This document shows positions 116 to 61,031 of a DNA stretch of 64,000 nt, one piece after another (positions within the stretch are counted from its first letter, which is position 1; every line of letters starts with the position of its first letter). A program made the position numbers and the translations under genes. The notes below the pieces were generated by a model. It ran no database searches. It saw nothing but the letters and a program-made list of their open reading frames with translations, and had not been told where the DNA came from. Source of the DNA: Haliotis rubra (lineage: Eukaryota); assembly GCF_003918875.1 (NCBI RefSeq), contig NW_025765154.1, forward strand, positions 124,001 to 188,000. The letters run 5' to 3'.

Positions 116-118
116 CTG

Positions 119-4804: not shown

Positions 4805-5254
4805 CAGTGTCAAAGGCTACATTGATAATTTTGCTTTTCAGCCCTACTGAAAATATCTATGAAGAACAGGAAACAGCTGTGTTTTTTGCAAACTACAATC
4901 TATGATGGACCATAATTTATGGCAAGGGGGTTGATGCTGATATGGGGGAAGAAATCAATTTTGTACACATGAGTTTGTACATGAGTAAGTGATTATGGTT
5001 TTACGCCGCTTTTAGCAATATTCCAGCAACATCATGGCAGGGGACACCAGAATTTGGCTCACACTGTACCCATATGGGGAATCGAACCCGGGTCTACAGC
5101 CTGTCGAACAAACACTTTAACCACTAGAGGAGGAAGGGGGCGGCACATTCACATTGTACATGCTACTCCATAAAAATCATCATCCCCTAAGCTATAAATT
5201 ATGTACAACCCCTATCAATGATAAATATATTCAGCTATGTAGCCTTTGATACAG
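4805..5254. mobile_element. Nested elements: outer TIR element, inner TIR MITE (~4900-5214) and a SINE A (~4982-5127)
   Basis: Outer inverted pair CAGTGTCAAAGGCTACAT / ATGTAGCCTTTGATACAG. Inner pair CATAATTTATGGC..GGGG.TGATG / CATCATCCCC..GCTATAAATTATG. SINE A body in the middle. Confidence 0.6.
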
Positions 5255-37454: not shown

Positions 37455-37884
37455 CCAATTTAGAACTGATCTTTGATACTTATACCTTTGTCATAAGAGG
37501 CAGCTAACAGGTGGTCATGGCCACTGACTTGGTTGACAAGTGTCATCGTATCCCAACTCGTAAATCGAGGTTCATGCTATTAACTACGGATTGTCTGGTC
37601 CAGACTCGATTATTTACCAATCGCCGCCATATAGCTGGAATATTGCGGGGTGCGGTGTTTAACAACAAAACAACCAACTAATCAGAAAATCCAGTTACTG
37701 ATATACGCGTCTTCATTGCGATCAGGGGGCGTAGGGGTAGCCCAGTGGTAAAAGCGTTCGCTAGTCACGCCAAAGTCCTGGGTTCGATTCCCCACATGGG
37801 TAAAGTGTGAAGCCCATTTCAGGTGTCCCCCGCCATGATATTGCTGGAAAATTGCTAAAAGCGCGTAAAACTATACTCACTCAC
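37455..37884 (+). mobile_element. Family B (~37455-37680) followed by SINE A (37725-37884)
   Basis: The SINE A has TSD TCATTGCGATCA. Confidence 0.85.
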
Positions 37885-38147
37885 TCATTGCGATCAAGCA
37901 GTCTATGCTAACCCAAGAATACTCATCAAAGATCTGGACATGTACATAGACAGTGAGACCAAGGTAGTTAACAAGAGTATCTTCAGCAGAGGTGTGGCTG
38001 TCGCAAATCCTGGGTGGCTTAATGCATCATAATGTAGAGATACTTGACTAAGTGAAATAACTATGGTTCATCTCCACTTTTAGCAATATCAAATTAGGGG
38101 CCTCGAAGGGCCTCGCATACTGTACCCATGTGGTGAACTAAAACCAG

Positions 38148-38254
38148 GGCCTAGATTTTCGGAGCTCTCTTAGCGCTAAGATAGTCGTAAGTTAATGTTA
38201 ATGTATGGCACTTACGACTATCTTAGCGTTAAGAGAGCTTCGAAAATCTAGGCC
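38148..38254. mobile_element. Palindromic MITE inserted in a degenerate SINE A
   Basis: TIRs GGCCTAGATTTTCG / CGAAAATCTAGGCC, flanks CAG/CTG; host SINE sequence TGTACCCATGTGG..AA on the left. Confidence 0.85.
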
Positions 38255-38448
38255 CTGGTTCTTAGCAAGATCCATAAATTATAAGGCAATCCAAACACCC
38301 CAAGCCATTTCTTCAAAGAACTAACTGAGACTGTCTTTGTCTATTTTCATACTCCATTAGAACTTACCACTGCTTCCCTAACAACACATAATCTGACAAT
38401 GCTTATCTAACAAAGTGTTCACCAAACTTTTCATATGATGTACATGAA

Positions 38449-38610
38449 AGTGAGTGAGTATGGTTTTACGCCGCTTTTAGCAATATTCCAGCAATATCAA
38501 GGCAGGGGACACCAGAAATGGTCTTCAGACATTGTACCTATGTGGGGAATCGAACCCGGGTCTTCAGTGTACTGAGCTTATGCTTCAACCATTAGGCTAC
38601 CCCACCACCC
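38449..38610 (-). mobile_element. SINE family A
   Basis: Shares private substitutions with the 16938-17104 copy. Confidence 0.9.
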
Positions 38611-39838
38611 TGATGTAGCCAAATGGCTGCAGTAAACGTTACCCAAAAGAAATCAATCAGAATCAAGATAAGATTTTTTCAATTCAATCACACAATATGA
38701 ATCAAAGCATAATTCAATACTATAGATCATATAACTCACAAATCTGTTAACCGCTTTGTATACATCATCAATTGACAATGGCTACAGTAAAAACAGAAAA
38801 TTATTTATGTCGATAGGTGCGTCACAGGAATCAATAGACAAACTGTCTAATACACATCCGTGTAGCATGAATGAAACATCCTCACTGAACAGCTTTACAT
38901 TGTGGGACGCAGCAGCCCAGTAACAATGGGGCTCCATGTTGTACTAGGAAGGATATTCACACCCACGCCACTTCTACAAAAGGACACTTCCAGCATCATG
39001 ACATTGTCATTTGACAGTAATTGTACCTGATATTATTACAAACCCAAACTGGTTATGATTGACTATTAACATCATGAATTCTGAATCATTAGCATCATTA
39101 TTATGACATCATTATATTGAAATATTCAAACTGAATTCAATTTGGATTGACAATATACCACACTTTATAGCTCATAATGTGCACTTACGAAGAATATACT
39201 TAACATTCTCAGATACATGTTTCATGAAAACTACTATTAAATGTATTGTGCGCAGTCAGATACTACATCAAAATTGCTACAGGTTAACAAACTGGAAATA
39301 ATGAGTGAGTCAATAACGACATGACATTTACATACCATTACTGGAAATGATGATCTACAATTTTAAATTCTTCATCAGATGAGATAATAACAGAAATATC
39401 AAACTGACTTGACAATCCATTGATTTATATCACGAGTAATGCACACTATCACTGTATGATCACATGACAACGTGTGACTGAGAATTACAAACCAATCCAA
39501 TAATCCTTTAATTATAAGGCTACCCAAACACCCTAGACACCTCTTAAAAGAAGTAACTACCTCTGTCTGGCTGTCTTTGTGTACGTTCATACTCCATTAG
39601 AACTTACCACTGCTTCCCTAACAACACATAATATGATAATGCTTAACCAAGGCAATTAATTGTTCACCAATCTTCTTATTTGAAAGTGAGTGAGAATGGT
39701 TCTACGCCGCTTTCGGTAATATTCCAGCGACACCATCATATGATTACACGATCACGTGTCACTACGATTTACCAACCGATGACGACCAGCAGATTTTGCA
39801 AGGAACCAGTTCTAACCCGGACCTACCACTTTATCAAG

Positions 39839-40075
39839 GACCCATGAATATCCAGGGTAAAATTGGTCTTCAGTAACCCATGCTTGTCGTAAGAGGCGAC
39901 TAATGGGATCGGGTAGTCAGGCGGACTGATTTGGTTGGCACATGTCATCGGTTCCCAATTGCTTAGATCAATGCTCATGTTGTTGATCACTGGATTGTCT
40001 GGTCCAGACTCAAATACTTACAGACCACCGCCACATATCTGTAATATTGCTGAGTGCAGCGTTAAACTAAACTCA
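39839..40075 (+). mobile_element. SINE-like family B
   Basis: GACCCATGAA...CCCATGCTTGTCGTAAGAGGCGACTAA...tail. Confidence 0.88.
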
Positions 40076-40854
40076 ACCTCATTAATGGAATAGCGGACAC
40101 CACAGTTCATATGGTGCATCATCTGATGACAAATTTTGCTAGATAACTATCACATCCTGTTAAACTATCAGCAGTGTTTCCGTTTCACAATCCATCCGAA
40201 CATTGCCATTTTGGACATCAAATCAAAACTTCAAATTCAAATTTAAACAATACTGTGAACAGATCAAAACTGCGAATATTGAGGCCTTCATGTTCAATAT
40301 TTTACAAATTGGCACAATTCTACTTGCTACCAAATCTTTACATTGTTGAAAGTGTGAGGACAAATTAAGTTTAAAGTCTGTGTGACACTCAATATTACTG
40401 AGGATATCTCATGATATGGGTGAGTGAGTGAGTAAGTTGGGTTTTAGCAATATTCCAGCAACATCACAGCGGTTGACAGCAGAAATAAGCTTCACACATG
40501 GTACCCATGTGGAGAATCAAACCCAGGCTTTCGGCATGGCGAGTGAACGCTTAACCACTGGGCTACCCCTCCATCCCGCACTCATGGAAAATAGTTATTA
40601 TCTGCCCCTGTATGTATAGTAGGGTACCAAGAGGTGGCTTTTCACTTGGCTTAAAATCAAGGCACATTTACAGCCACTTGGCGACCAGTCATTTGAGCTG
40701 AAACCTTCAAGATAAGATCATGGCTGAAGATGGGTTGACATTATAACCTTTTTGATCGAGACAAATTTAATGGTGTCTCATGTACACAGTGTTTATTATG
40801 CAGTGAGTTGAAATGGGGTTGAAAATCGCTTTCAAGAATATTTCACTCAGGCGG

Positions 40855-41118
40855 ACTCTGAGAAATAGATGATCACGCATATTGGAGATACCACCCACTA
40901 AAAGAAAGACCAATGGTGACAGATCTTTTCCAAAGCATGACCCACATTGTGGAACAATCTCCCAAACAACATCCACAAATTATGGGAACTTGACCAGTTT
41001 AAGAGTTTGCTAAAACACAGTTTTTTGACACTGCCTTTACTTTGCCTGAGCACCTTTGTGCAATTTGTTAGAATAGGCACTATACAGATATTAACATTAT
41101 TATTTTTATTATTATTAC
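40855..41118 (+). mobile_element. 3' end of an L2/CR1-type LINE (degenerate ORF2 C-terminus and tail)
   Basis: Frameshifted translation LEIPPTKRKTNGDRSF / LWNNLPNNI....LDQFKSLLK matches the GDRxFSxxxPxLWNxLP...FKxxLK C-terminal motif of CR1/L2 ORF2; ends in (TTA)n. Confidence 0.75.
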
Positions 41119-41174
41119 ATAACAACAAGCATGTATCTGTGTGTGGCAGCTTGTCCTGGTTGTGACGTCTGCTA

Positions 41175-41355
41175 GTTTATATTGCAGACCTACTGTGACT
41201 CCAGAAGGCATGGATAGCCCCACTGAGACCCATTACCCTGCCTCTGTGATGACCCCTCAGTTTTATACCCTGGAGATAGCAGGATAACAACAACTGCCAT
41301 CTTTTAACGTCTTCTGGTATGACACAGCAGTGGATCGAACCACCAACCTTCTGGC
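41175..41355 (-). mobile_element. Third, older tRNA-headed SINE fragment
   Basis: Minus-strand B box GGTTCGATCC followed by GTCATACCAGAAGACGTTAAAAGATGG. Confidence 0.5.
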
Positions 41356-41507
41356 GTTTATTACGAAATAAGTACGGACCTAATTCAAGTACCATGCAGG
41401 ACTAGGGCTGTGAGCTTTGAAGGTCATTGGGGAAATGTCATGGGGAGTCAACTGATGATGTCAGAAGGTGTGGAGAAGGTCAAGCACACATAATCCGAAC
41501 AGTGTAA

Positions 41508-41660
41508 NNNNNNNNNNNNNNNNNNNNNNNNNNNNNNNNNNNNNNNNNNNNNNNNNNNNNNNNNNNNNNNNNNNNNNNNNNNNNNNNNNNNNNNNNNNNN
41601 NNNNNNNNNNNNNNNNNNNNNNNNNNNNNNNNNNNNNNNNNNNNNNNNNNNNNNNNNNNN
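41508..41660. other. Assembly gap (153 N)
   Basis: Run of N. Confidence 1.
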
Positions 41661-42179
41661 TAGCAATGTTCCAACAATATCAAGGCAGGGAGCAGAATCT
41701 GATCATAGGCAAGCCAAGGAAACATATCACTTGCAAGGCTACCCCCAAACATTCATAACTTGCTCTGTCAAAGGAGTACACTTTTTATACAGAAATGTCA
41801 ATTTTGACCACTCCAGCATTAAGGATTACCTTTCTGGAGCCACAAAATGTATTTTTTAATTATGATTGTAAGAAATGCTCGTCATTTAACATAAAAGATT
41901 TGTGCCAAGAAATCCATTTTTTCCAAAGTCTTCCTCCCCATCCAGAAAATAGACTAGCTTATCTCCATCGGCTGCCAGCATTATGTGAAGCATGCACTGT
42001 CTCACATGTCGTACTGCCTCACACATCTTACACCCTCACACGTCGTATGTTGATCCTATTTGCATGCTTGTGTGAAGGAAAATAGTTTTCTTTAGCAGAA
42101 CAAAACCTGCTTGTAGTACTGGTTGTACACATTGTGCATGTTCTTTACATATCACTACACTCCATTCCCTGCGGTGCGT

Positions 42180-43310
42180 TGTGAGTGAGTGAGTGAGTGA
42201 GTGTCAGCGAGCAATATATGGGCATTGTGAGTGAGTGAGTGAGCAATATATGGGCAATGTGAGTGAGTGAGTGAGTGAGTGATCAATATATGGGCATTGT
42301 GAGTGAGCAATGAGTGCATTGTGAGTGAGAGTGATCAATATATGGGCATTGTGAGGAGTGAGTGAGCAATATATGGGCATTGTGAGTGAGCAATATATGG
42401 GCAATATATGGTAATATGTGAGTGAGTGAGTGAGTGAGCAATATATGGGCATTGTGAGTGAGTGAGTGAGTGAGCAATATATGGGCAATGTGAGTGAGTG
42501 AGTGAGTGAGCAATATATGGGCAATGTGAGTGAGTGAGTGAGTGATCAATATATGGGCATTGTGAGTGAGTGAGTGAGCAATATATGGGCATTGTGAGTG
42601 AGCGCAATATATGGTAATTTCGAGTGAGTGGGTGAGTGAGTGAGCAATATATGGGCATTGTGAGTGAGTGAGAGCAATATATGGGCATTGTGAGTGAGTG
42701 AGTGAGTGAGCAATATATGGGCATTGTGAGTGAGTGAGTGAGTGATCAATATATGGGCATATATGGGCATTGAGGAGGAGTGAGCAATATATGGGCATTG
42801 TGTGTGAGTGAGAGGAGCAATATATGGTAATTTGAGTGAGTGAGCAATATATGGGGTGAGTGTGAGTGAGCAATATATGGGCATTGTGAGGTGAGTGAGA
42901 GCAATATATGGGCATTGTGTGTGAGTGAGTGAGTGATCAATATATGGGCAATGTGAGTGAGTGAGTGATCAATATATGGGCATTGTGTGTGAGTGAGCAA
43001 TATATATGGGCATGAGTGAGTGAGTGAGTGAGTGATTGAGCAATATATGGGAATTGTGAGGAGTGAGTGAGCAATAATATATGGGGTGAGGAGTGAGTGA
43101 GTGAGCAATATATGGCAATATATGGGCATTGTGAGTGAGTGAGTGAGAGCAATATATGGGCATTGTGAGTGAGTGAGTGAGTGAGTGAGCAATATATGGG
43201 AATTGTGAATGAGTGAGTGAGTGAGTGAGTGAGTGGGTGATTGAGCAATATATGGGAATTGTGAGTGAGTGAGTGAGTGAGTGAGTGAGAGCGAGCAATA
43301 TATGGGCAAG
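42180..43310. repeat. Compound minisatellite (GAGT)n-GAGCAATATATGGGCATTGT
   Basis: Fixed ~20-bp core alternating with variable-length GAGT runs. Confidence 0.95.
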
Positions 43311-43909
43311 GGTCATGAGCTTTATACTCTTTGCTCCTGATCAAATGAATAACATATCGCCACACTCCAGGATCCAGTGAAGGTAGAATTGAGTCAGGCC
43401 CTTCCTCTATTTAGACAGCTCCCACGTCAAACTCAATCAGTTCTATCACGTAATGTTCATTTGTGCAGTGTGCAGTGTGCAGTCTCATCTTACAAATACA
43501 CACCATCCAGCCATTAGGTGTGGTGGCAAGTCAGCATTTCCAAGAACGAGTGAGTTTAGTTTTATGCCCCTTTCAGAAATATTCCAGCAACATTACGGCA
43601 GGGAACACCAGAAATGGACTTCACACATTGTACCCATGTGGGACATCGAACCCGGGCCTTCAGCATGACGAGCGAATGCTTCAGCAACTAGGCTACCCCA
43701 CCAACCTCCTATCCAAGAACCTACGGGTACTATATGTTGCACGGCCAGGCGACATTTCTAGATATCAGTTGATCTCTTAATACCAGTAGTTACTTTATAG
43801 ACATGGCTGGGGTGTATGGATGGCCGAGTACTTGTGGGTTCCACCAAAGTGATGAGACCTGCATTACTTCGGTCTTTCCTCCCACATTAAACACACCATG
43901 ATACAACTG

Positions 43910-44168
43910 GGCTCTGTTTCAAAAAGCAATTGTAGCGCTACGACTGTCGTAAGTCTATGTTACAGTTTAAGAGTTATGACAGTCGTAGCACTACGACTGT
44001 CGTAAGTCTATGTTACAGTTTAAGAGTTATGACAGTCGTAGCACTACGTAAGTCTATGTTACAGTTTAAGAGTTATGACAGTCGTAGCACTACGACTGTC
44101 GTAAGTCTATGTTACAGTATAGGAGTTACGACAGTCGTAGCGCCCTGACAGCTTTGTAAAACGGGGCC
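43910..44168. mobile_element. Harbinger-like MITE with internal 53-bp tandem amplification (about 4 units)
   Basis: TIRs GGCTCTGTTTCAAAAAGC / GCTTTGTAAAACGGGGCC, flanks CTG/TTG; unit TAGC.CTACGACTGTCGTAAGTCTATGTTACAGTTTAAGAGTTATGACAGTCG. Confidence 0.85.
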
Positions 44169-44514
44169 TTGGTATTAAACCCAAACTCACTCACTCTGAT
44201 AGTTTTGTGCATTGAGAAAGAATACTTCAACTGAACTTACAAGGTTACATAGCAATGTTAATGCTTCAATTACTACGAGTCAATGTCAACATAAGTCAAG
44301 ATAGTTTTTAGAAGAAACACGTAACTTTGACTTCATAGCCACTAGTTTAGGTCCAGCTCCTTAAAATGATCTTAGCCCTATAGAGATCATAAGCCTGTGT
44401 TTAAGCATGGAAGTAATGACCTTTAGTGACCATATCTATTGAAACAACCATTGGTCAAGAGGGCTACCATGTTTTTATAGTCAATACATGTCGAGAGCAA
44501 AGTCTAGCAAGCTA

Positions 44515-44762
44515 AGTAAGTGAATGAGTTTAGTTTTACGCTGCACTCAGCAATATTCAAGCTATATGGAAGCAGTCTGTAATAATAGAGTCTGCACCAG
44601 ACAATCCAGTGATCAACACCATCAGCATCGATCTACGCAATTGGGAACCGACGACATGTGTCAACCAAGTCAGTGAGCCTGACCACCCAATTCCGTTACT
44701 TGCCTCTTACGAGGACAAGCATGGGTTACTGAAGATCAATTCTAACCTGTATCTTCACAGAT
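44515..44762 (-). mobile_element. SINE-like family B
   Basis: Consensus match. Confidence 0.85.
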
Positions 44763-47700
44763 CTCTAGCGTAAGGACACTGAACGAAACTGTCTGCCACC
44801 CACAGGCTGCTTACCCCCCAGGAAGGTGAGAATGAAAACCACGTGCACATGGATCCATTGACTGGGATAGTAATAATATCGATCATGGTCTAAGTGCATT
44901 TGAGCCGTCATAATTTGGAAAGTGCACCATACAAATTCATTGTATAATAACTAGTCACAAAAGTATTTAGTACAGACTGAGAACAAAGAATCTCTACATC
45001 TCAAAACAATACAGAAGGGTTAAAACTCTGCAACCAAAGAGAGATGCCCAACCTACCAGTATCTCTGCTACAGCAACTCTAACAACCAGCAACATCAAAG
45101 CCTGTGACAGACTCCGCCCTAGGCAGCTCCACCCGCCAAACTGACCCAAATGACCAAGTTTGCTCTGTCTCGAAGCAACATCTCAGTAATACCGGTGATG
45201 CTGAGGAGTGGAGTCATGCATCCTGGTCTGACATTCCACGGAGAAGGTGGACACACCGATGTTCCACGTGGTAATGCAGAGGGGGCCAGTAGCTGATAAC
45301 ACAGCTAGGAAACTGTGATAAGGGTGGATCCTCAGAGACACTCCCTTGATTACTTCCGGAATCTGTCCCAAACAACAAATTTTGCCTCTTGTACATGACG
45401 GAATGTTTGTACAGTTTGGCCAATTTGTATGTCATTGAACACTCAAAGCAAATAACGTTGGTGTAATTACAAAGATGAATAGACACTCCTATACGATCAG
45501 AGAGGTTTCAGTATAATCACGGACAAATTATGTGTTCTGAGTCATGAAAAGAGAAGAAGAAGTAAGTTAAGCTTGTAGTACAACATGTGAAGGGGCCAAT
45601 GGTGGGTTCAGAAATATCATCTGCGGGAACGTAGTGAGTTAGCGAGTGAATGTTATTTTATGCCTCAGTCATCACCACTACAGCAGTCAGCCATCAAGCT
45701 GAAAGGCCGGGTTCGATCGTCCACAGGGGTATAATGTTTGAAGCCCATTTCTGGTGTCCCCCGCCTACTGGAATATTGCTACAAGTGGAGTAAAACCCAA
45801 CTCACTCACTCACAACAGCAGTCAAATCAGATCAAAGCAAACTAGTAGTTAAAAACATAGGCAATGATCCTTCTGTCATGATATGACGAACAAAGACAGC
45901 GACGTGTCACATGTTGTAACCAACCGATTATCACTCAAGTATGCAAATTGGCACTCATGTTTGTCTAATACGTCATGGAACAACTTATGCAGTGTAAACC
46001 ACCTAATAATAAGATGACAAAACACATCAATTAAGACAAACTATGCAACCGTAGCAATTAGCTGAAGAAGATTACATTTTTAAAAATAGTTAACAAGAAT
46101 AAACTAACACATGTATGCATCAAACTATCACTAACATCAAGAATCATAGTCAGTTGTCTACGTCCAATTTTCCTGTAAATGCAACTACTTTGCATGAATT
46201 GTCATAAAAAAGAAAGCAAAGCATTTTTTATTCGCATAAAATGCCTGAAGCCAGATAAGTTGTGGAAAAACAATCTGTTAATCATAACATGCAAGACAAC
46301 AGGGTTAGTGGGCCAATCATGACAGAATTTGACCCTGTCTCATGTCAACTCCAATACATAAGCAATATCCTATATCATGTATGTGTGATCAACAGCAAGC
46401 ATCAACTAAAAGTACTGTCGGAAATAGATCCCGTTAAGTAAGCCTCTTCACGACAAAAAAATGTTTTTAGGATGTTACTCTGTATCCTTAAAATATAGAA
46501 AACACAATTGCAAATAGCATATGTCGAAATAACCCACATCGGCCTAACTGGGCGTTCAGTGGGATGCGTAATAGGATATCCAGAAAAGCATGTTTACTCG
46601 TAAAATCGGGCAAACCTTAATAAAATACGACTAGCTGCTGAAAACAAAAGATCAGACTATAGATGGCAATTAGGTCGCTCAGCCAGGTATGACGACGGGC
46701 CGTCGACTCACCTGTCATGAAATGCATGTGCTGCCTCCAGGCGCAAGGGGTCATCTCAAAGATATTTTATGCTTTCTGATGTGTGTTGAAAATGTCTCAT
46801 CTATTGATTATCATCTTACGCGTCTTTCTTTCATAAAGTTTATGTTGAGATATGTAAAAGAGTATAATACCCATAGAAAAGCTTAAATCAGCCATCTTAT
46901 TAAATGTCTCAAAATATATAGGTGGCATGCCCACTCGAAGATCGACAGGACTGGATATTATTTGTAAATAGTTATGACATGCCATTTGCTTCCCCAGTTT
47001 AATTCCCCTAAAGGATTATCTTATCTCAGCTGATATCTCTATCCCCCAGCCCGACCCCAACCACCCATCCTGACATAACGTTTGAGACAACTCGTTTGAG
47101 ACGACCCCTCCTACCTGTTTCTTTTTATAGTGTTAGTGAGACTCCTTGGTAGCAACATCCTTAATAGTTTCAGTATTAAAGTTACTGTTATTTACGTCAG
47201 CTATCGTTTATAAAGAATCTAACTTTAATTTTAAAATGGGCATTTAAAAAGTGTCCTTTGTAATACAATATCATCGCATACTAATTTCCATAAAGTCATG
47301 GTCTGTTCCAAATAAGCTGCTTTGGACTTAAAAAAAACAGCATTGCTCATTTCTGCACTAATCTCTCCTCAGTAAAGTCCTTTTTCTACGTTTCCTATCT
47401 CCCTACCACTGAGACTGTAGTTAGGCCGAACTTAGTTTAACAGATATTTCACACTTTCACATATCAACTACATAAATTGTAGATATAAATGCGAAAAAAC
47501 ACTGTTTTTCTATTTCTGGCAGTACTTTAACAATAATAATTGGTGCTTTCCTTTCGAGTGTTAAGCAAGGAGAACATATAGAACTGTTTTTGAGTAGTTC
47601 ACAACTATATATATATTCGTAATATGCACAGATAAATTGTTCCCACAATTACAACAAAAATATTAAATATATAAAATAAGAAGTAATTATCTTAATCCAA

Positions 47701-47924
47701 ACAAATGCAAGGTAATTTAAAATGCATATGATCATTTGTAACCATAAAAATATAAGGCAAAACGAATCTCACCCAAATTATGAAACAATAAAGACAGCCA
47801 TACTTAAATCAGATCAGAATTCTTTTAGCAACTTGGTCACTTAAATTTGGGATAGTTATTACAAAATTTCACCTTGACTGTCAGGTGAGCTGAACATAGG
47901 CATAAAGTCTTGATTCTTGTGGTT

Positions 47925-48142
47925 ATGTTTGTTTGTTGTTTAACACCGCACTAGGCATTATTCCAACTATATGACAGCAGTCTGTAATCCAGTGATCAAC
48001 AGCATGAGCATCGATCTACGCAACTGGGATACGATGACATGTGTCAACCAAGTCAGCAAACCCGACCGTCCATTCACGTTAGCCACCTTTTATGACAAGC
48101 ATGGGTTGCTGAAGATCAATTCTAACCAGATCTTCACGGGTT
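47925..48142 (-). mobile_element. SINE-like family B with (AAAC)n tail
   Basis: Consensus match, intact 5' head. Confidence 0.85.
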
Positions 48143-48442
48143 TCTAATTTTTATGAAAATTAAACTTCCGAAGAGCCTATACTTATGAAAAAGTCCTAAG
48201 AGCATGAATCAGGGTTTTACCAGAGGTTGTCCAGTATGTACAAACATATAGAGTGGATGCAAAGAAGAAAGGCTGGGATGTACAGGAATATTCATCCTAC
48301 CAAACACTTGACATGAAACACAAAGGTCCTGTCATTACAGAAGTATCATTTCTCACAGTACACAATACCACTTGACTTCTTGCCAGGATTCTCACATTTC
48401 TTGTGAGGACCCTTGAAAATATACTAATATAAAACACTGAAA

Positions 48443-48733
48443 GATTGCATTGTGGATTGTATTGTGGATTGTATTGGATTGGATTGTGTATGGTGTATTG
48501 TACTTTGTATTGTGCATTGTATTTTGTATTGTGTATTGCATTGTATATTGTTGTATTGTGCATTGTATTGTGTTGTTGTATTGTGTTGTGTATTGCATTG
48601 TATTGTGTATAATGTTGCATTGTGTTGTGTATTGTGCATTGTATTGTGTGTTGTGCATTGTTGTATTGTGCATTGTATTGTGTTGTGTGTTATATTGCAT
48701 GTTGTATTGTAGATTGTATTGTGGATTGTATTG
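48443..48733. repeat. Degenerate (ATTGT)n pentanucleotide repeat
   Basis: Seen directly. Confidence 0.9.
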
Positions 48734-50703: not shown

Positions 50704-50951
50704 CTGTCTGTGTGTCTGTGTGACTGTCTGAGCCTGTGTCTGTGTCTGTGTGACTGTCTGAGCCTGTGTGTTTGTCTGAGCCTGTGTCTGAGCCAGTGTC
50801 TGTCTGAGCCTGTATTTGTGTCTGTGTGTCTGTGTTTGTGTCTGTCTGAGCCTGTGCCTGTGTCTGTGTGTCTGTGTGTCTGTGTGTTAGTGTCTGTCTG
50901 AGCCTGTGTCTGTGTCTGTCAATGCATGTGTCTGTGTGTCAACCTGAGTCT

Positions 50952-51012
<61 letters not shown>

Positions 51013-51131
51013 TGTCTGTGTGTTTGTGTCTGTCTGAGCCTGTATTTTTGTCTGTGTGTTTGTGTCTGTCTGAGCCTGTGTCTGTCTGTCAACGCATGTG
51101 TCTGTCTGTCAACCTGTGTGTCTGTGTGTCA

Positions 51132-51170
<39 letters not shown>

Positions 51171-51226
51171 TGAATGTCTGTGTCTGAATGTCTGTGTGTT
51201 AGTGTCTGTGTGAGCCTGTGTCTGTA
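50704..51226. repeat. Compound (TG)n / (TGTC)n / TGTCTGAGCC microsatellite
   Basis: Seen directly. Confidence 0.95.
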
Positions 51227-51267
51227 TGACTACATCAATGTATATTACTCAGCCCAACTCATCTACA

Positions 51268-51372
51268 TCTGTGTTGTAGCCAGTATATCTGTGTTGTAGC
51301 CAGTATATCTGTGTTGTAGCCAGTATATCTGTGTTGTAGCCAGTATATCTGTGTTGTAGCCAGTATATCTGC
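51268..51372. repeat. 20-bp minisatellite x5 (ATCTGTGTTGTAGCCAGTAT)
   Basis: Perfect tandem copies. Confidence 0.95.
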
Positions 51373-52116
51373 TGGAGGCTGCAGTTGGTAGGTGACACCT
51401 CTCTTTCCCTCTGTTACATTTGGACTGCACAATTACATTGCTCAAGCACTCTGCAGACTGTTTTTGCCTCCTTCCACTGTACTAGTCAGATTAGGTTCAC
51501 ACAAAAGGCTCCCTGGCTGACAGATTCCTCCCACAACCAACTCACACTGTCAGCCCTGGGTTTCTGCTCAAGACACAACGACCTTGCAGACGACCTTTCC
51601 CTCCAGGTTTTGTCATTACATACAGTGAAACCATAATCCAAACATAGATATTCTCAATGGTTGTACAGAGTTTCAAAATAATCTGTTTGTATATGGTTAT
51701 ATTGTACTTCATAAAAATGTCCATTCAATTGTTGGTGTCTGCACAGAGAAAACAGAAAATTTGTGAATCCAAACTATCTTATACCTCAAAAAACAGTTTC
51801 CTCCATGTTTATCCTCAACTAACAGTGCTCAACTTATGGAAATCATAAGTCACCTGTCCTGGTACCATTCACTGGGAGTTCTCTACTTGGCAGATTTAGA
51901 CATTTGTTTTTAAATGACCAGTAGTAACCTTATTTTATTAGTTTGTAGCTTGTCCAGCATATATGAGACAAACAATCTTCCTTATTTCACATTTTTCATT
52001 ATTTTTATACAGTTCCAATTCATAGCTACCTGAAAGCATTGAGAACTGGTTCAAAATTGAAAATATGGCCCTCAATGCTACATTTGAAGTATATCTGCAA
52101 CCTCAGCACCACTAAG

Positions 52117-52343
52117 CAGGCAAAGAAACCTTTCAAAATTTCCCACTAGACCACAGGACCAGTGAGTGGACAATAATTAGTGGTCCTGTCTGTACGTCAC
52201 TGGTCCAAAATAACATTCATAGATTTACTTACCTATCAAAACAAAATTCACTGGCCACCAGGACCACTTCAAACAGCATTTAGTGGTCCTGATGAAATTT
52301 TTCTAGCCAATGACCACAGGACCAGCGTAAATTTCGCACACTA
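52117..52343. mobile_element. Degenerate non-autonomous DNA transposon (hAT-like) with repeated GGACCA motifs
   Basis: Multiple GGACCA/TGGTCC subterminal motifs; right end AATTTCGCACACT; left TIR and TSD unclear. Confidence 0.45.
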
Positions 52344-52957
52344 AGTAGGCTTCAGATAGTGCACTACTGCTACTTTCAAAGGCAGCTTGCTCACAAAATC
52401 ATAGATATAATCTTGCTGAATCAGCATTTTTTATTGTGAGGTCATCAGTGTCAAATCCAGGCTTAAGTCAGAATAGACAGTTGTTTCACCAATCAGAAAA
52501 CAGTCTACTTTAGATTCTTGCTTAACATCAACAATAAACTTCTTATCATACATGTATGTGCTCATGGACACAATTGGTCCACATCACAACTTCAGACCTA
52601 TCGATGGGCATAATGTTAGTATTGGTCCAGGTTATCTAATCAATATATTCATGAATGACATCTCATGACCTGTCAGAATACCAATTGGACCTTCACTATA
52701 TGCATCCATCTATTTGACTGTCTCCACCAGTTCCAGGGGGCACAAGGGACCAAGTCATTAAAGCACAGCCCAGAAATATATGAGGATGGGTTCGAATCCC
52801 AGATTCTGTCTGATTATGGTTCTAGGTTTGATCGTTTGTTTGAAATAGTGGTAAACATCTACAGCATCACTTAAGCTGTTCCATTGATTCAGGCTTATAC
52901 ACTTGTTCGGAGTGATAAACTGTTCCAAGTTATTTTTAACCTAAGTCACTCTTTCAA

Positions 52958-53234
52958 TAGGGGCGAAACGGTACGTATTGCGGTACAAGACCTTCGGTTC
53001 GGTCCATTTCGGTTTGGTATATGAGATATTATCATAATACACAAAAGAAAAGAAACGCATAGATTTTGACAAAATGTTTCAATTTCTAGACATTTTGGAA
53101 AAGGTTTAAAAAGGTTAATAAAATGACGATACAAAAACCGAAAATACCGATTTTTGGGATTGCATCACAGTATACTGAACTGAAGGCAACATAACGTGGT
53201 TCTACTAACACCGCAGTATACCGTTTCACCCCTA
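52958..53234. mobile_element. Non-autonomous hAT element, 8-bp TSD
   Basis: TIRs TAGGGGCGAAACGGTA / TACCGTTTCACCCCTA, exact TSD TCTTTCAA, subterminal CGGT/ACCG motifs. Confidence 0.92.
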
Positions 53235-53250
53235 TCTTTCAAACTAGTAG

Positions 53251-56200
53251 ATCAGGCATGGTGTATCCACATCCAAGTATTTGTTATAGCCCATATCATT
53301 CTAACTTGCTGGGATATAAGTGATATACTGTTTAAAGCACCCCCTCACAGGAGCAGGAGAAGCAAATCAGGGATGGTGTATCCACATCCAAGTATTTGTT
53401 ACAGCCCATATCTGGCTGGGATATAAGTGATATACTGTTTAAAGCACCCCCTCACAGGAGCAGGAGAAGCAAATCAGGCATGGTGTATCCACATCCAAGT
53501 ATTTGTTACAGCCCATATCATTCTAACTTGCTGGGATATAAGTGATATGCTGTTTAAAGCACCCCCTCACAGGAGTAGGAGAAGCAAATCAGGGATAGTG
53601 TATCCACATCCATGTATTTGTTATAGCCCATATCTGGCTAACTTGCTGGGATGTAAGTGATATACTGTTCAAAGCACTCCCTCACAGTAGCAGGTCAAGC
53701 AAATCAGGGGTAGTGTATCCACATCCATGTATTTGTTATAGCCCATATCTGGCTAACTTGCTGGGATATAAGTGATATACTGTTCAAAGCACCCCCTCAC
53801 AATAGAAGATCAAGCAAATCAGGCATGGTGTATCCACATCCATGTATTTGTTATAGCCCATATCTGGCTAACTTGCTGGGATGTAAGTGATACACTGTTC
53901 AAAGCACCCCCTCACAGGAGCAGGAGAAGCAAATCAGGCATGGTGTATCCTCATCCATGTATTTGTTATAGCCCATATCTGGCTAACTTGCTGGGATGTA
54001 AGTGATACACTGTTCAAAGCACCCCCTCACAGGAGCAGGAGAAGCAAATCAGGCATGGTGTATCCTCATCCATGTATTTGTTATAGCCCATATCTGGCTA
54101 ACTTGCTGGGATATAAGTGATATACTGTTCAAAGCCTTCCCTCACAATAGAAGATCAAGCAAATCAGGCATGGTGTATCCTCATCCATGTATTTGTTATA
54201 GCCCATATCTGGCTAACTTGCTGGGATATAAGTGATATACTGTTCAAAGCCTTCCCTCACAATAGAAGATCAAGCAAATCAGGCATGGTGTATCCTCATC
54301 CATGTATTTGTTATAGCCCATATCTGGCTAACTTGCTGGGATGTAAGTGATACACTGTTCAAAGCACCCCCTCACAGGAGCAGAAGAAGCAAATCAGGCA
54401 TGGTGTATCCACACCCATGTATTTGTTATAGCCCATATCTGGCTAACTTGCTGGGATATAAGTGATATACTGTTCAAAGCCTTCCCTCACAATAGAAGAT
54501 CAAGCAAATCAGGCATGGTGTATCCACATCCATGTATTTGTTACAGCCCATATCTGGCTAACTTGCTGGGATAAAAGTGATATACTGTTTAAAGCACCCC
54601 CTCACAATAGAAGATCAAGCAAATCAGGCATGGTGTATCCACATCCATGTATTTGTTATAGCCCATATCTGGCTAACTTGCTGGGATATAAGTGATATAC
54701 TGTTCAAAGCACCCCCTCACAATAGAAGATCAAGCAAATCAGGCATGGTGTATCCACATCCATGTATTTGTTATAGCCCATATCTGGCTAACTTGCTGGG
54801 ATGTAAGTGATACACTGTTCAAAGCACCCCCTCACAGGAGCAGGAGAAGCAAATCAGGCATGGTGTATCCTCATCCATGTATTTGTTACAGCCCATATCT
54901 GGCTAACTTGCTGGGATGTAAGTGATACACTGTTCAAAGCACCCCCTCACAGGAGCAGGAGAAGCAAATCAGGCATGGTGTATCCTCATCCATGTATTTG
55001 TTATAGCCCATATCTGGCTAACTTGCTGGGATATAAGTGATATACTGTTCAAAGCCTTCCCTCACAATAGAAGATCAAGCAAATCAGGCATGGTGTATCC
55101 TCATCCATGTATTTGTTATAGCCCATATCTGGCTAACTTGCTGGGATATAAGTGATATACTGTTCAAAGCCTTCCCTCACAATAGAAGATCAAGCAAATC
55201 AGGCATGGTGTATCCTCATCCATGTATTTGTTATAGCCCATATCTGGCTAACTTGCTGGGATGTAAGTGATACACTGTTCAAAGCACCCCCTCACAGGAG
55301 CAGAAGAAGCAAATCAGGCATGGTGTATCCACACCCATGTATTTGTTATAGCCCATATCTGGCTAACTTGCTGGGATATAAGTGATATACTGTTCAAAGC
55401 CTTCCCTCACAATAGAAGATCAAGCAAATCAGGCATGGTGTATCCACATCCATGTATTTGTTACAGCCCATATCTGGCTAACTTGCTGGGATAAAAGTGA
55501 TATACTGTTTAAAGCACCCCCTCACAATAGAAGATCAAGCAAATCAGGCATGGTGTATCCACATCCATGTATTTGTTATAGCCCATATCTGGCTAACTTG
55601 CTGGGATATAAGTGATATACTGTTCAAAGCACCCCCTCACAGGAGCAGGAGAAGCAAATCAGGCATGGTGTATCCTCATCCATGTATTTGTTATAGCCCA
55701 TATCTGGCTAACTTGCTGGGATATAAGTGATATACTGTTCAAAGCACCCCCTCACAGGAGCAGGAGAAGCAAATCAGGGATGGTGTATCCACATCCAAGT
55801 ATTTGTTATAGCCCATATCTGGCTAACTTGCTGGGATATAAGTGATATACTGTTTAAAGCACCCCCTCACAATAGAAGATCAAGCAAATCAGGCATGGTG
55901 TATCCACATCAATGTATTTGTTATAGCCCATATCTGGCTAACTTGCTGGGATGTAAGTGATATACTGTTCAAAGCCTTCCCTCACAACAGAAGATCAAGC
56001 AAATCAGGCATGGTGTATCCTCATCCAAGTATTTGTTACAGCCCATATCTGGCTAACTTGCTGGGATATAAGTGATACACTGTTCAAAGCACCCCCTCAC
56101 AGGAGCAGGAGAAGCAAATCAGGCATGGTGTATCCTCATCCATGTATCTGTTATAGCCCATATCTGGCTAACTTGCTGGGATATAAGTGATATACTGTTT

Positions 56201-57280
56201 AAAGCACCCCCTCACAGGAGCAGGAGAAGCAAATCAAGGATGGTGTATCCTCATCCATATATTTGTTATAGCCCATATCGAGCTAACTTGCTGGGATGTA
56301 AGTGATACACTGTTTAAAGCACCCCCTCACAACAGAAGATCAAGCAAATCAGGCATGGTGTATCCTCATCCAAGTATTTGTTACAGCCCATATCTGGCTA
56401 ACTTGCTGGGATATAAGTGATACACTGTTCAAAGCACCCCCTCACAGGAGCAGGAGAAGCAAATCAGGCATGGTGTATCCTCATCCATGTATTTGTTATA
56501 GCCCATATCTGGCTAACTTGCTGGGATGTAAGTGATACACTGTTTAAAGCACCCCCTCACAATAGAAAATCAAGCAAATCAGGCATGGTGTATCCACATC
56601 CATGTATTTGTTATAGCCCATATCTGGCTAACTTGCTGGGATATAAGTGATATACTGTTCAAAGCCTTCCCTCACAATAGAAGATCAAGCAAATCAGGCA
56701 TGGTGTATCCTCATCCATGTATTTGTTACAGCCCATATCTGGCTAACTTGCTGGGATATAAGTGATACACTGTTCAAAGCACCCCCTCACAGGAGCAGGA
56801 GAAGCAAATCAGGCATGGTGTATCCTCATCCATATATTTGTTATAGCCCATATCTGGCTAACTTGCTGGGATATAAGTGATATACTGTTTAAAGCACCCC
56901 CTCACAGGAGCAGGAGAAGCAAATCAGGCATGGTGTATCCTCATCCATATATTTGTTATAGCCCATATCGAGCTAACTTGCTGGGATATAAGTGATATAC
57001 TGTTCAAAGCACCCCCTCACAGGAGCAGGAGAAGCAAATCAGGCATGGTGTATCCTCATCCATGTATTTGTTATAGCCCATATCTGGCTAACTTGCTGGG
57101 ATATAAGTGATATACTGTTCAAAGCCTTCCCTCACAATAGAAGATCAAGCAAATCAGGCATGGTGTATCCACATCCATGAATTTTGTTATAGCCCATATC
57201 TGGCTAACTTGCTGGGATGTAAGTGATATACTGTTCAAAGCACTCCCTCACAGTAGCAGGTCAAGCAAATCCACATCCAT
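53251..57280. repeat. 115-bp satellite, about 35 copies, with higher-order structure
   Basis: Monomer CAAATCAGGCATGGTGTATCC(A/T)CATCCATGTATTTGTTATAGCCCATATCTGGCTAACTTGCTGGGAT(A/G)TAAGTGATA(T/C)ACTGTT(C/T)AAAGC...; the ORF track repeats every 115 nt. Confidence 0.98.
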
Positions 57281-58292
57281 GTTCTTGCCATACAACCCTC
57301 ACACTGAGCTCTAACATCGCTGTCCAAATCGATGTGTGGTATTTATGCCTTGGACAATGTCTCTTACAAAATATTCAACCAAAGTCATACAAATGGCATT
57401 TGAACCCTGCATAATGGCGTGTAAGTATCATGAATGATAAATGCACGGGTTGCCTCCCTCCTTGTGATTATTTTGACATGACACCATTATCTGGGTCAAA
57501 TGAGCTAAATATCAGATTTGTTTAAAACGTACGGCAACTGACTTCCAATGCATGGTATTCAGTGTTCAAAATTAACAATAAAAGTCAAGAAGTCATGGTC
57601 ACAACCCAATTAAATTTAAAACATCAACATCAGTGAAATTTTTTCTCTATTATCAGACTAAACAAATTCCATTGAGTGTAATAGGCAAAATGGCAGTAAA
57701 AATTCTATGAATAGATCACTGAAAATCAGCGATGACACCAGGTGTTCTAAAGAAACGTAAGCACGTACTTTCCTAAAAGAAGGCCAGCCTCAAGAGATTT
57801 TCAAAGACGATTTAAACTTCAAACATTTAAACATCAAAATACGACCCAAAAAATTATACTGTCACATTTTATAATGAGAATGAGCCACCGGACTGTGCAA
57901 CGTTTGCCTCGGGTCTAGACACACGACATGATGTGGAAAGCCACAAACTGCAATCACTAGACTATTAGTCACTTCACACAGTTAAGCAAAGGTAGTTAAG
58001 AAACTCAGGTATTCTAAAGGTCAGAAACTGATACCAAGCAATACAATGACAAACTGATCTGTGTCAAGTCTTTCCATTAAGAATCCTTTTCAAGAGGCAA
58101 ATGTCCTTCACCATTTAGTAATAAAATCATGTTGATTCCACCAGGAAAACAACATATGTTTATTATTTTATTCAGCAAAAATCGTTATTATATTATTCCA
58201 GTCGGAACCTACATTCAATTAATGACGAACAACAAAATTTCTATTTGTCTTAGATGGGTCATCCAGGTGAAGAGATAGGATATTCGAGTCAA

Positions 58293-59686
58293 GAGTGAGT
58301 GAGTGAGTTTGGTTTTATGCCGCTTTTAGCAGTATTCCAACAATATCACGGCGGGAGACACCAGAAATGGGATTTACACATTTTGCACATGTGGGGAATC
58401 AAATCCGGGTCTTCTGCGTGACGAGCGGACCGGAAGCTTTATCCACTAGGCTACACCACCGCCCCATTTTTGAGGCAAGAATTAGAGAATAGAAGTACAA
58501 CTCAAAAGAAGTTAAGAACATAGAAAAAAGTATATATCACATGAAAATCAATAATAATAATAATATTAAGCCATTAAACTATGCACACATTCTATCAAAC
58601 TGGAGCCTAGTTTCATAAAGAATGTAACATATTTGGACAAAGTTTTGAAGATCATAAACTTAATCTGAAAATATTTTTGCTACATGTCTTGGCCACCTCC
58701 AAACAAGGGTTTTCTATAACCATGTCTGAAAAACCAAAACTTTAAGACTTTGGGCTTAATGGTGCTTCTAAAATTAGGCCAGAGAGAGAATCATTCAGCT
58801 AAATAATCAGTCAAGAACTAGTCAATATGAAGTCATCCTTATTCCATCCTCATACTCATAGTGGGATAGCCCAGTGGTCAATGCGTTTGCTTGTCACGTG
58901 GAAGGCCTGGGTTCGATTCCCCACATGGGTAAAATGTGTGAAGCCCATTATGGTGTCCCTTTCCATGATATTGCTGGAATATTGCTAAAAGCGGCATAAA
59001 ACCCAACTCAATCACTCACTCACAGTAGACTATTAGAGGTTGGTTTGTGGAGCTTCAAGAAATCTGAATTAAAACATTTGTAACAACTGGCACTGCATGT
59101 CACCAGTCCTGACTGAGCTGAGGACAAAGTATTTTATTCATCTTGGAGTTAATTTATCCAGGTTATAATTCAGAAGTAATTTATCAATGACAGGTTCCCC
59201 TTTGTTCGTTCAATGCAGCAATACCATTGTTAGTTACCAACAAAATCTGTTAAGTCAAAAGTTCAGCAGTTTGAGTTGAACACAACATGTTTCAGTTCAA
59301 TAATCACTGGGGATGAATATGAGTGACCGAGTGAGTCAGGTTTTATGCCTCTTTCAGCAGTATGCCAGCAATATCATGAAAATAGGCTTCAAACATTGTA
59401 CTCACATGAGGAATCAAAGCTGAGCCTTTGGCTTACCAAGCAAACGCTCTAGCTACAAGGCGACCACACTGACCTGGATGACTATGAGATGAGTTTATGT
59501 ATCATAATTTCTCTACACATGAGGGGCCATGGGGTAGCCTAGTGGTTAGAGCATTTGCTCCTCATGCCAAAGACCTGGGTTCGATTTCCCACATGGGTAC
59601 AATATGTGAAGCCCTTTTCTAGTATCTCCCACCATGATATTGCTGGAATATTGCTAAAAGCAGGGTAAAACTGTACTCACTCACTC
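58293..59686. mobile_element. Four SINE A copies (58293-58465 minus, ~58858-59022 plus, ~59320-59470 minus, ~59523-59686 plus)
   Basis: Consensus matches. Confidence 0.85.
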
Positions 59687-59949
59687 CTAGCACATACAAT
59701 CTATGTACTGTCATCTGTGGATGTGAGAACCCCCTGCTGGTATTTGGTGGTTAATGGCGTGACAACTGTCAGGTTACATTGTGGAAAGAGCATCTATTGC
59801 TATGGAATAACTATTCTCATCTGGCTCCCTTTTAATGCTGTTCTCATATCACATGAACACTTTTATAACCTACTCAGTTAATCACTTCCATAAATTTGAC
59901 TATGTTCACTGAAATTATATTTGAACAGTATTTCAGTTCACTATGGTAG

Positions 59950-60195
59950 GACCCGTGAAGGTTTGGGTTAGAATATTGATCTTCAGTAACCCATGCTTGT
60001 CGTAAGAGGCAACTAACGGGATCGAATGGTCAGGCTCACTGACTTGGTTGACACATGTCATCGGTTCCCAATTGCGTAGATCAATGCTCTTGCTGCTGAT
60101 CACTGGATTGTCTGGTCCAGACTCGATTATTTACAGACCGCTGCCATATTGCTGGAATATTGCTGAGTGTGGTGTAAAATTAAAGTCACTCACTC
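59950..60195 (+). mobile_element. Full-length SINE-like family B
   Basis: TSD TCACTATGG(T/A)AG; head GACCCGTGAAGGTTTGGGTTAGAATATTGATCTTCAG. Confidence 0.92.
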
Positions 60196-60429
60196 ACTAT
60201 GGAAGGAAAGCCCAAAGAAAGGCATGTCTTTGAGGTTTTCCACTGTAGTGAGACCAAGGGCATGGTTAAGGTGCTCACAAACATATACACATACTCTAGG
60301 CAAATCTGAGATTTGAACCAATCTTATAGCATCAGACTACTTGGACGGAGTCTTTGTGTATTCTTGGGTAGTCATGGGGCAGTGGGATAGCCCAGTGGTT
60401 AAGCAAGAGCTTGTGAAGCCAAACACCTA

Positions 60430-60536
60430 GGACCCGTTCCACAAAGCGATCGTAACCCTAAGATGATCGTAACTCCCATACTTTAACATAGACTTACGAC
60501 TGTCGTAGCGCTACGATCGCTTTGAGGAACAGGGAC
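60430..60536. mobile_element. Palindromic MITE inserted in a SINE A (~60376-60655, plus) just before the B box
   Basis: TIRs GGACCCGTTCCACAAAGCGATCGTA / TACGATCGCTTTGAGGAACAGGGAC, flanks CTA/CTG. Confidence 0.85.
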
Positions 60537-61031
60537 CTGGGTTTGATTTTCCAAATGGCCACAACATGAAAATTTCATTTTCTGATTTCCTGGTGTCCCC
60601 CGCTGCAATATTGCTAAAATACGTGAAAATCCACCGCACTCACTCCCTCACTCATTAGAGATGTCACTGTAATATTGTAATGTGATACTGATGTATCAGT
60701 AGATTATTCATGATGATAATGTATCAATTCAAACAATACATCATCAACATTACATGAAAAATTAATTGTAAAAGAAACACTTAAATTTGTTCAGATAACT
60801 ATAGTAACAATAGACAGTCAGAAAAACAACAATTCAATTTCAATCATGTAATGGAACAGTTTAGTTCACAGTCTAAAAGCTATCATTTATTAATTCAATT
60901 GATCTTCAGAAGTTGTTTTATCCATGCATACTAAGAATAATAAATCTAAATAACATACTAATACATTGTGATACTTAAGAGCAGATATATCAATACTAAA
61001 CTTTACAATCAATGACACCACTAGTGTTGAC

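What the first reader, a model, noticed from the sequence alone, without database searches (positions are those of the whole stretch)
38141..60545. Two unrelated MITEs hit the same CCCGGG site of the SINE: CpG decay may create Harbinger targets
Seen: different MITE families at 38148-38254 and 60430-60536 both sit in the GACCCGGGTT palindrome just 5' of the SINE A B box. Reconstructed empty sites are AAAACCWGGTTCTT and AAACACCTGGGTTT. Established, from memory: animal Harbingers make CWG TSDs, and zebrafish Harbinger3_DR prefers AAACACCWGGTCTTT. Inference: methyl-CpG deamination (CCCGGG to CCTGGG) turns ageing SINEs into preferred landing pads, and insertion splits the A and B boxes. That would be a SINE-MITE interaction system giving MITEs safe harbours and possibly disabling SINE promoters. 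A third MITE (43910) also sits at a CTG in a SINE-like tail.
Basis: partly seen in the sequence, partly recalled or inferred. Interest (0 to 1): 0.7.

Follow-up and report, generated by a model that had tools for sequence, protein, structure and literature searches.

The report
Harbinger-type MITEs in decayed SINE palindrome
Two small abalone transposons do sit in the same mutated CCCGGG site of an abundant SINE, and about 70 such insertions exist genome-wide, but the two are sister families and the site takes only about 1% of their insertions because it fits their ordinary target motif.

Summary
Two 107-bp MITEs (38148-38254, 60430-60536), each flanked by CWG, split fossil tRNA-type SINE copies at the CCCGGG palindrome on the 5' edge of the B box.

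The MITEs are not unrelated. They align without gaps over 107 bp, 84% identical in the core.

49 copies chosen without regard to flanks give the target AGWC|CWG|GWCT. The SINE's GAAGAC|CYG|GG fits one half perfectly, and only after its CpG mutates.

Genome-wide junction searches found about 20 M2-type and about 50 M1-type insertions in the palindrome. For M2 this is about 1.2% of roughly 2,000 elements. The site holds 0.18% of CWG trinucleotides, and a 4-bp-flank model predicts 1.6%. Two native CTG sites in the SINE took 10 and about 5 M2 insertions.

None of the 49 copies is in the palindrome. One is inside a SINE, matching the SINE's 3.3% share of CWG sites.

So "CpG decay creates preferred targets" holds. 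A "SINE-MITE system" or safe harbour does not. A first-stage note on another piece of this genome (s1-333182) reports a similar case.

Unexpected extra: the two flanking CWGs disagree in their middle base in about half of copies, in a family-specific direction. This suggests donor-flank carry-over.

The parts
38148..38254 (+). M1: 107-bp MITE, termini GGCCTAG...CTAGGCC, almost a perfect hairpin. It is 99% identical to other genomic copies.
38145..38147 (.). Left flanking CAG of M1. It is discordant with the right flank.
38255..38257 (.). Right flanking CTG of M1.
38075..38310 (-). Heavily decayed host SINE of M1 (approximate limits). The body from B box to core lies left of the MITE. The head lies to its right and is barely recognisable.
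   Evidence: Local alignment of the empty site to SINE consensus positions 49-123.
60430..60536 (+). M2: 107-bp MITE. The family consensus is GGCCCCGTTCC...GGAACRGGGCC. This copy has GGACCC and GGGAC at its two ends.
60427..60429 (.). Left flank CTA, a mutated CTG.
60537..60539 (.). Right flank CTG, followed by the decayed B box GGTTTGATTTTCC.
60376..60655 (+). Host SINE of M2. The head with the A box is at 60376-60429. The B box, core and CTCA-type tail are at 60537 to about 60655.
   Evidence: Alignment to SINE consensus positions 2-123; direct reading of the sequence.
43910..44168 (+). M3: M2-related MITE of 259 bp with internal tandem duplications. Flanks are CTG and TTG. It lies next to an 18-base SINE-tail-like stretch, not inside a SINE.

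Best explanation
M1 and M2 are sister subfamilies of one abalone family of 107-bp hairpin MITEs. They are of the PIF/Harbinger-related kind that makes CWG target-site duplications (NuwaI type, like zebrafish Harbinger3_DR). Their transposase picks an extended palindromic target, about AGWC|CWG|GWCT.

The very abundant tRNA-derived SINE makes up about 3.8% of the sampled DNA, roughly 0.5 million copies. It carries GAAGAC|CCG|GGTTCG at the T-arm/B-box edge. Its left half is a perfect half-site. The centre becomes CTG or CAG only when the methylated CpG deaminates, as it has in about 30% of copies.

Old SINE copies therefore offer many good, though not exceptional, targets, and are hit again and again as a by-product. 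Shown here: the target logo, the recurrence, the per-site preference, and that the hosts are older than the inserts. Inferred: the transposase family, since no autonomous partner was examined, and methylation as the cause of the decay.
For: - CWG flanks occur on 47 of 49 left and 47 of 49 right flanks. The symmetric flank logo reads A(-7) G(-6) W(-5) C(-4).
- M1 and M2 align gap-free, 84% identical in the core.
- Genome-wide junction patterns (MITE end + CWG + SINE flank, up to 3 mismatches) gave these counts. M2 palindrome: 10 + 12. Native CTG98: 11. Native CTG122: 14, of which 10 are one tandem array. M1 palindrome: 44 + 17. Reversed-pattern controls gave 0.
- The M2 denominator is 4,082 ends against 23 control hits.
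- Pattern sensitivities are similar across the SINE sites, 83-95%.
- Palindrome-derived CWGs are 0.18% of CWG sites. A flank PWM gives them 1.6% (trained on M2) to 2.8% (trained on M1) of the weight.
- In the 44 M1 junction hits I counted about 2% mismatches in the MITE part and about 12% in the SINE part. The hosts are therefore older than the inserts and the hits are independent.
- CWG TSDs and GG(G) termini are the published NuwaI hallmarks (PMC4482050).
- A 15-bp target preference is known for vertebrate Harbingers (PMC2836001; PMC3016246).
Against: - Estimates run from 477 (a lower bound) to about 20,000 (crude contig-depth sums). The M1 share in the palindrome is therefore only bracketed, at roughly 0.3-10%.
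- Only three SINE positions were assayed, so the full insertion profile along the SINE is unknown.
- The 9-base PWM over-predicts at 5.4%.
- No autonomous element with matching terminal repeats was looked for.
Confidence: 0.8

Rival explanations
1. This is a SINE-MITE interaction system in which ageing SINEs serve as dedicated landing pads or safe harbours, and MITE insertion disables SINE promoters.
For: - Hits recur at one SINE site, about 70 junctions.
- Insertion does separate the A box from the B box.
- Another first-stage note reports 107-bp MITEs in SINE heads elsewhere in this genome (s1-333182).
Against: - Only about 1% of M2 insertions are at the site, the level the generic flank motif predicts.
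- 0 of 49 unbiased copies are at the site.
- The share of insertions inside SINEs (1 of 49) matches the SINE's share of CWG sites, 3.3%.
- The hosts are old, decayed copies.
- 7 of 49 copies abut another MITE end instead, a stronger preference.
- SINEs also insert into MITEs (L016).
Confidence: 0.05
2. Pure coincidence. The SINE is so abundant that two MITEs landing at the same position in one window needs no site preference at all.
For: - The SINE is 3.8% of the sample and about 0.5 million copies.
- Many windows of this genome were read, so a striking pair was likely to be noticed in some window.
Against: - The palindrome holds 0.18% of CWG sites but takes about 1.2% of M2 insertions.
- Per available CWG, M2 uses it 5-12 times more than the native CTG98 and CTG122 sites of the same SINE.
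Confidence: 0.1
3. One or a few ancestral SINE+MITE composites were later copied, by retroposition or segmental duplication. The many junctions would then not be independent insertions.
For: Some junctions are clearly duplicates: C2691 three times and C2712 twice, and a 164-bp-period array in C2456.
Against: - Two subfamilies and two registers are involved.
- The SINE side of the junctions is heterogeneous (TTCGATT, TTTGATT, TTCAATT, TTGGATT and others) and about five times more diverged than the MITE side.
- The middle base of the flank varies between junctions.
Confidence: 0.05

Closest known systems
NuwaI group of the PHIS (PIF/Harbinger-ISL2EU-Spy) superfamily, including zebrafish Harbinger3_DR
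   Same: - 3-bp CWG flanking duplications.
- Terminal repeats that begin with GG(G).
- An extended palindromic target: here AGWC|CWG|GWCT, and AAACAC|CWG|GTCTTT for Harbinger3_DR.
- Already reported in one mollusc (PMC4482050; PMC3016246).
   Different: - These are 107-bp non-autonomous hairpin elements, and no transposase partner was examined.
- Position -6 of the target prefers G here, where Harbinger3_DR has C.
- The middle base of the two flanks often disagrees, which the papers read here do not mention.
Tourist-type MITEs such as rice mPing (PIF/Pong)
   Same: - Short non-autonomous elements with a 3-bp TSD whose middle base is W.
- An extended target preference.
- Excision by staggered cuts in the TSDs, so that the excised element carries donor TSD overhangs (PMC4561436; PMC11254759).
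   Different: - The TSD is TWA, not CWG, and targets are AT-rich.
- None of the mPing papers read here links it to a SINE-borne target.
Nested transposable-element insertions and MITE-derived tandem arrays in molluscs
   Same: MITEs sit in or next to other repeats, and arrays of MITE units occur (L008, L028, C2456).
   Different: Here a specific target, created by CpG decay in a tRNA T-arm palindrome, can be named and counted.

Membership tests
NuwaI / CWG-type PIF-Harbinger MITE | 3-bp target-site duplication CWG | tested here: met
   - CWG is on both sides in 42 of 49 unbiased copies.
- SINE-hosted cases show that three bases are duplicated: GAAGAC+CWG ... CWG+GGTTCG against consensus GAAGAC-CCG-GGTTCG.
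- Caveat: the middle base differs between the two sides in 17 of the 42.
NuwaI / CWG-type PIF-Harbinger MITE | Terminal inverted repeats that begin with GGG/GG | tested here: met
   GGCCTAG (M1), GGCCCCG (M2), and GGTCCC, GGGCCC, GGTGCC in relatives. PMC4482050 says the start is 'usually GGG'.
NuwaI / CWG-type PIF-Harbinger MITE | Extended palindromic target preference beyond the TSD | tested here: met
   Symmetric logo A G W C | CWG | G W C T from 98 half-sites.
NuwaI / CWG-type PIF-Harbinger MITE | An autonomous partner in the genome with the same terminal repeats, encoding a DDE transposase and a Myb/SANT ORF1 | not tested
tRNA-derived SINE (host) | Internal Pol III A box and B box in a tRNA-like head, a family-specific body, and a simple-repeat tail | tested here: met
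   The 162-bp consensus has TAGCCTAGTGG (A box), GGTTCGATTCC (B box) and a CTCA-type tail. 127 hits were found in 352 kb. The parent tRNA was not identified; the ARAGORN result on the consensus was not meaningful.

The most novel reading that the evidence does not exclude
The flanking 'duplications' of these CWG-type MITEs may be chimeras. One flank would carry the middle base of the target, and the other the middle base of the donor site. The donor base would arrive on a 3-base 5' flap of the excised element, be ligated as a mismatch, and be resolved by replication.

Each copy would then carry a one-base tag of its parent. M2 sources would be mostly CAG...CTG and M1 sources mostly CTG...CAG. 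That would be population-scale natural evidence for piggyBac-like flap carry-over in Harbinger-type transposition, and a way to trace source elements. The decayed SINE sites serve as the control, because their original middle base is known.
Probability: 0.55. Interest if true: 0.55.

Novelty: new member of a known kind. Interest (0 to 1): 0.33.

Why it matters
It gives a concrete case in which mutational decay of one repeat family creates preferred targets for another. CpG deamination in a tRNA T-arm palindrome does this here, and I counted the resulting insertions genome-wide.

This helps explain nested repeat patterns in mollusc genomes, and it warns against reading such nesting as a purpose-built system.

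The mismatched middle bases of the flanks bear on how PIF/Harbinger-type transposases cut and join DNA. They may be the more useful lead, because these enzymes are now used for targeted insertion in plants.

Tried and rejected
Later loci came only.
- The pattern for the A-box-side junction of the palindrome was contaminated. The reverse complement of an uninterrupted SINE (GGGGAATCGAACCCGGGTCTTCGG) resembles the M2 end. I used it only after filtering by eye, not for counts.
- The sequencing runs are kept only as contigs, so depth gives at best an order of magnitude. No empty allele was seen. Contigs of organisms A and E cross both M1 junctions.
- Models with no TSD or a 1-base TSD (insertion into C|G or at W) were rejected. 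The counts of C and G at SINE-hosted junctions fit a 3-base duplication.
- A CCTGGG SINE subfamily was rejected, because there are no linked diagnostic sites and those copies are older.
- The B-box-like flank in L023 is neither a tRNA nor a repeat.
- ARAGORN on the SINE consensus gave a meaningless wrap-around call.
- The insertion in L002 at nearly the same SINE position is not a CWG MITE. It has an 11-12-bp direct repeat.
Full report
**What is there.** The window is piece C264:124001-188000 of a 1.38-Gb abalone-type genome.

- At 38148-38254 lies a 107-bp element, GGCCTAG...CTAGGCC, flanked by CAG and CTG.
- At 60430-60536 lies another 107-bp element, GGACCCGTTCC...GAACAGGGAC, flanked by CTA and CTG.

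Forty further genomic copies of each were scored at 95-99% identity. These copies fix the family ends as GGCC...GGCC and show CWG on both sides.

I built a 162-bp SINE consensus from 44 near-full copies in a 352-kb sample. The sample was the window, 20 loci around M1 copies and 29 loci around M2 copies. The consensus has an A box, the palindrome CCCGGG at 53-58 running into the B box GGTTCGATTCC, and a CTCA-type tail.

Aligning the rebuilt empty sites to this consensus places both window MITEs in the palindrome. M2 used C-T-G of CCTGGG. M1 used the mirror C-A-G of CCCAGG, one base over.

The assembly gap at 41508-41660 is kilobases from every element discussed. It opens inside a SINE on its right side. 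It was neither filled nor relied on.

**What is wrong in the observation.** The two MITEs are not unrelated.
- BLAST found 81% identity over 73 bases.
- A multiple alignment is gap-free over all 107 bases. It is 76% identical overall, 84% in the central 67 columns and 60% in the terminal 20.
- They share length, hairpin layout, GGCC ends and CWG flanks, so they are sister subfamilies.

The third element (43910-44168) is an M2 relative with internal duplications. Only 18 bases on one side resemble the SINE tail, so it is not inside a SINE.

**Target preference.** The 49 genomic copies were picked by similarity to the MITE alone, so their flanks are unbiased. They give a symmetric logo, A G W C | CWG | G W C T.

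This is close to the published Harbinger3_DR target AAACACCWGGTCTTT (PMC3016246). It also matches the published NuwaI hallmarks of CWG duplications and GG(G) termini (PMC4482050).

The SINE reads GAAGAC|CCG|GGTTCG at this point. The left half is a perfect half-site, and the centre lacks CWG until the CpG mutates. Among sampled SINE copies the palindrome CpG is CG in 63%, TG in 23% and CA in 9%, like the SINE's other CpGs. CCTGGG copies are older (86.8% versus 92.5% identity) and share no linked diagnostic changes. This points to decay, not a subfamily.

**How often is the site used?** None of the 49 unbiased copies is in the palindrome. One (L017) is at the native CTG at SINE position 98. L016 is the reverse case, a SINE inside an M1.

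I searched the genome for a 13-base MITE end, then CWG, then 14 SINE bases, allowing up to 3 mismatches. Reversed-pattern controls gave 0 in every search.

| Site | Subfamily | Hits | Credible or independent |
|---|---|---|---|
| Palindrome, register 1 | M2 type | 10 | about 8 |
| Palindrome, register 2 | M2 type | 12 | about 12 |
| Native CTG98 | M2 type | 11 | about 10 |
| Native CTG122 | M2 type | 14 (10 in one tandem array) | about 5 |
| Palindrome, register 1 | M1 type | 44 | see below |
| Palindrome, register 2 | M1 type | 17 | see below |

- After removing segmental duplicates and doubtful rows, the M1 hits come to about 50 independent insertions.
- The sensitivity of the SINE parts is similar across sites, 83-95%.
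- M2-type ends followed by CWG number 4,082 against 23 control hits, or roughly 2,040 elements. The palindrome therefore holds about 1.2% of M2 insertions.
- Palindrome-derived CWGs are 0.18% of all CWG trinucleotides in the sample. A four-base flank PWM trained on M2 insertions elsewhere predicts 1.6%. The same model trained on M1 predicts 2.8%, and a nine-base model over-predicts at 5.4%.
- Per available CWG, M2 uses the palindrome about 5-12 times more than the two native sites. About 31% of copies have a CWG in the palindrome, against 86% at each native site.
- In the M1 junction hits the MITE side shows about 2% mismatches and the SINE side about 12% (my count). The hosts are therefore older than the inserts and the hits are independent.
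- The M1 denominator could not be measured. The first look gave 477, a lower bound. Contig-depth sums give roughly 20,000. The same method gives about 680,000 for the SINE, against about 500,000 from my sample, so it is an order-of-magnitude figure only.

**Verdict on the idea.** CpG decay does turn this SINE position into a good target, and it is hit recurrently by at least two subfamilies.
- The rate is what the generic flank motif predicts.
- SINE-hosted insertions as a whole (1 of 49) match the SINE's 3.3% share of CWG sites.
- Other SINE positions are used in similar absolute numbers.
- Both window hosts are decayed fossils.
- Insertion next to another MITE end is much commoner (7 of 49).

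Nothing here calls for a SINE-MITE system, a safe harbour or promoter silencing. A first-stage note on another piece of this genome reports two 107-bp MITEs in SINE heads (s1-333182). That fits the recurrence counted here but is not independent proof.

**An unexpected feature.** The two flanking CWGs should be identical copies of the target, yet their middle base often differs.
- In the 49 loci, 17 of 42 copies with CWG on both sides are discordant. Mutation would account for about one.
- Adding the 23 paired ends listed, M2 shows CAG...CTG 20 times, CTG...CAG 4 times and concordant flanks 22 times (binomial p = 0.0015).
- M1 leans the other way, 1 versus 5 (Fisher p = 0.005).
- Read outward from the element, 63 of the first 100 M2 ends show CTG. 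A true duplication would give 50 (p = 0.012).

SINE-hosted sites give a control with a known target.
- At native CTG98 (CTG in 60 and CAG in 3 of 73 copies), 3 of 9 A-box-side flanks carry the wrong base. All three pair with a correct CTG on the other side.
- At palindrome register 1, 12 of 43 M1 flanks read CAG|GGTT, although CCAGGG was found in 0 of 71 SINE copies.

The simplest reading combines two published results.
- mPing-type elements excise by staggered cuts in their TSDs (PMC4561436).
- Excised mPing carries donor TTA/TAA overhangs (PMC11254759).

A donor flap would be ligated opposite the target strand, leaving a W:W mismatch that replication resolves. One flank then keeps the donor's base. 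With few source elements this predicts about 50% of one discordant class, about 50% concordant and almost none of the other class. M2 shows 43%, 48% and 9%. This is an inference from sequence patterns and has not been shown biochemically.

**Limits.** Only three SINE positions and two subfamilies were assayed. M1 controls and its denominator are missing. No autonomous element was sought. The pattern counts depend on my reading of which hits are credible.

Noticed in passing
L001-L020 at 4898-5010; L022-L050 at about 1496-1610; window 38145-38257: The two CWG flanks of a copy disagree in the middle base in about 40-50% of copies. The direction is family-specific: M2 is mostly CAG...CTG and M1 mostly CTG...CAG. 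The same is seen at SINE sites whose original base is known. This fits carry-over of a donor-site flap.
   Followed up: partly
L001 5008-5116; L010 5008 onward; L026 1390-1605; L028 1608 onward; L040 1391-1702; L043 1501-1717; L045 1391-1607; window 11-221: 7 of 49 unbiased MITE copies abut another MITE end and share a single CWG. MITE ends are therefore stronger landing pads than the SINE palindrome, and may seed tandem arrays.
   Followed up: partly
L016 4720-5006: Reverse nesting: a full SINE is inserted inside an M1 copy. The SINE and the MITE were therefore active in overlapping periods.
   Followed up: no
L008 1691-2041; L028 1716-2082; G000:C2456:1551239-1553252: MITE-derived tandem arrays. 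The C2456 array repeats a MITE-end-plus-flank junction every 164 bp or a multiple of it (10 junction hits).
   Followed up: no
L002 5836-5944: An insertion of about 107 bp that is not a MITE sits at almost the same SINE position. It is flanked by an 11-12-bp direct repeat (AAGACTTGGAT) and starts T-rich, like a retroposed insert.
   Followed up: no
window 41661-41700: The right edge of the assembly gap opens inside a minus-strand SINE copy. The gap probably reflects repeat-induced assembly failure.
   Followed up: no
G000 hits, e.g. C335:3479931, C1651:9663, C2290:554682, C2740:253747, C2743:49275, C2456:1214354: Six M2 ends are followed by CWG+GTCTTCAG(C/T)AAC(C/T)C. A second repeat family with a GAAGAC half-site is therefore also hit recurrently.
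   Followed up: no
window 60517-60539 versus SINE consensus 53-70 (reverse complement): The M2 end GAGGAACGGGGCC|CWG resembles the reverse complement of the SINE B-box region GGGGAATCGAACC|CGG. This produced false junction hits and may be chance.
   Followed up: no
window 37876-38422: Contigs of a run labelled as a different organism (E) cross both M1 junctions with 4-5 differences. This M1 insertion is therefore shared beyond the assembled sample.
   Followed up: partly
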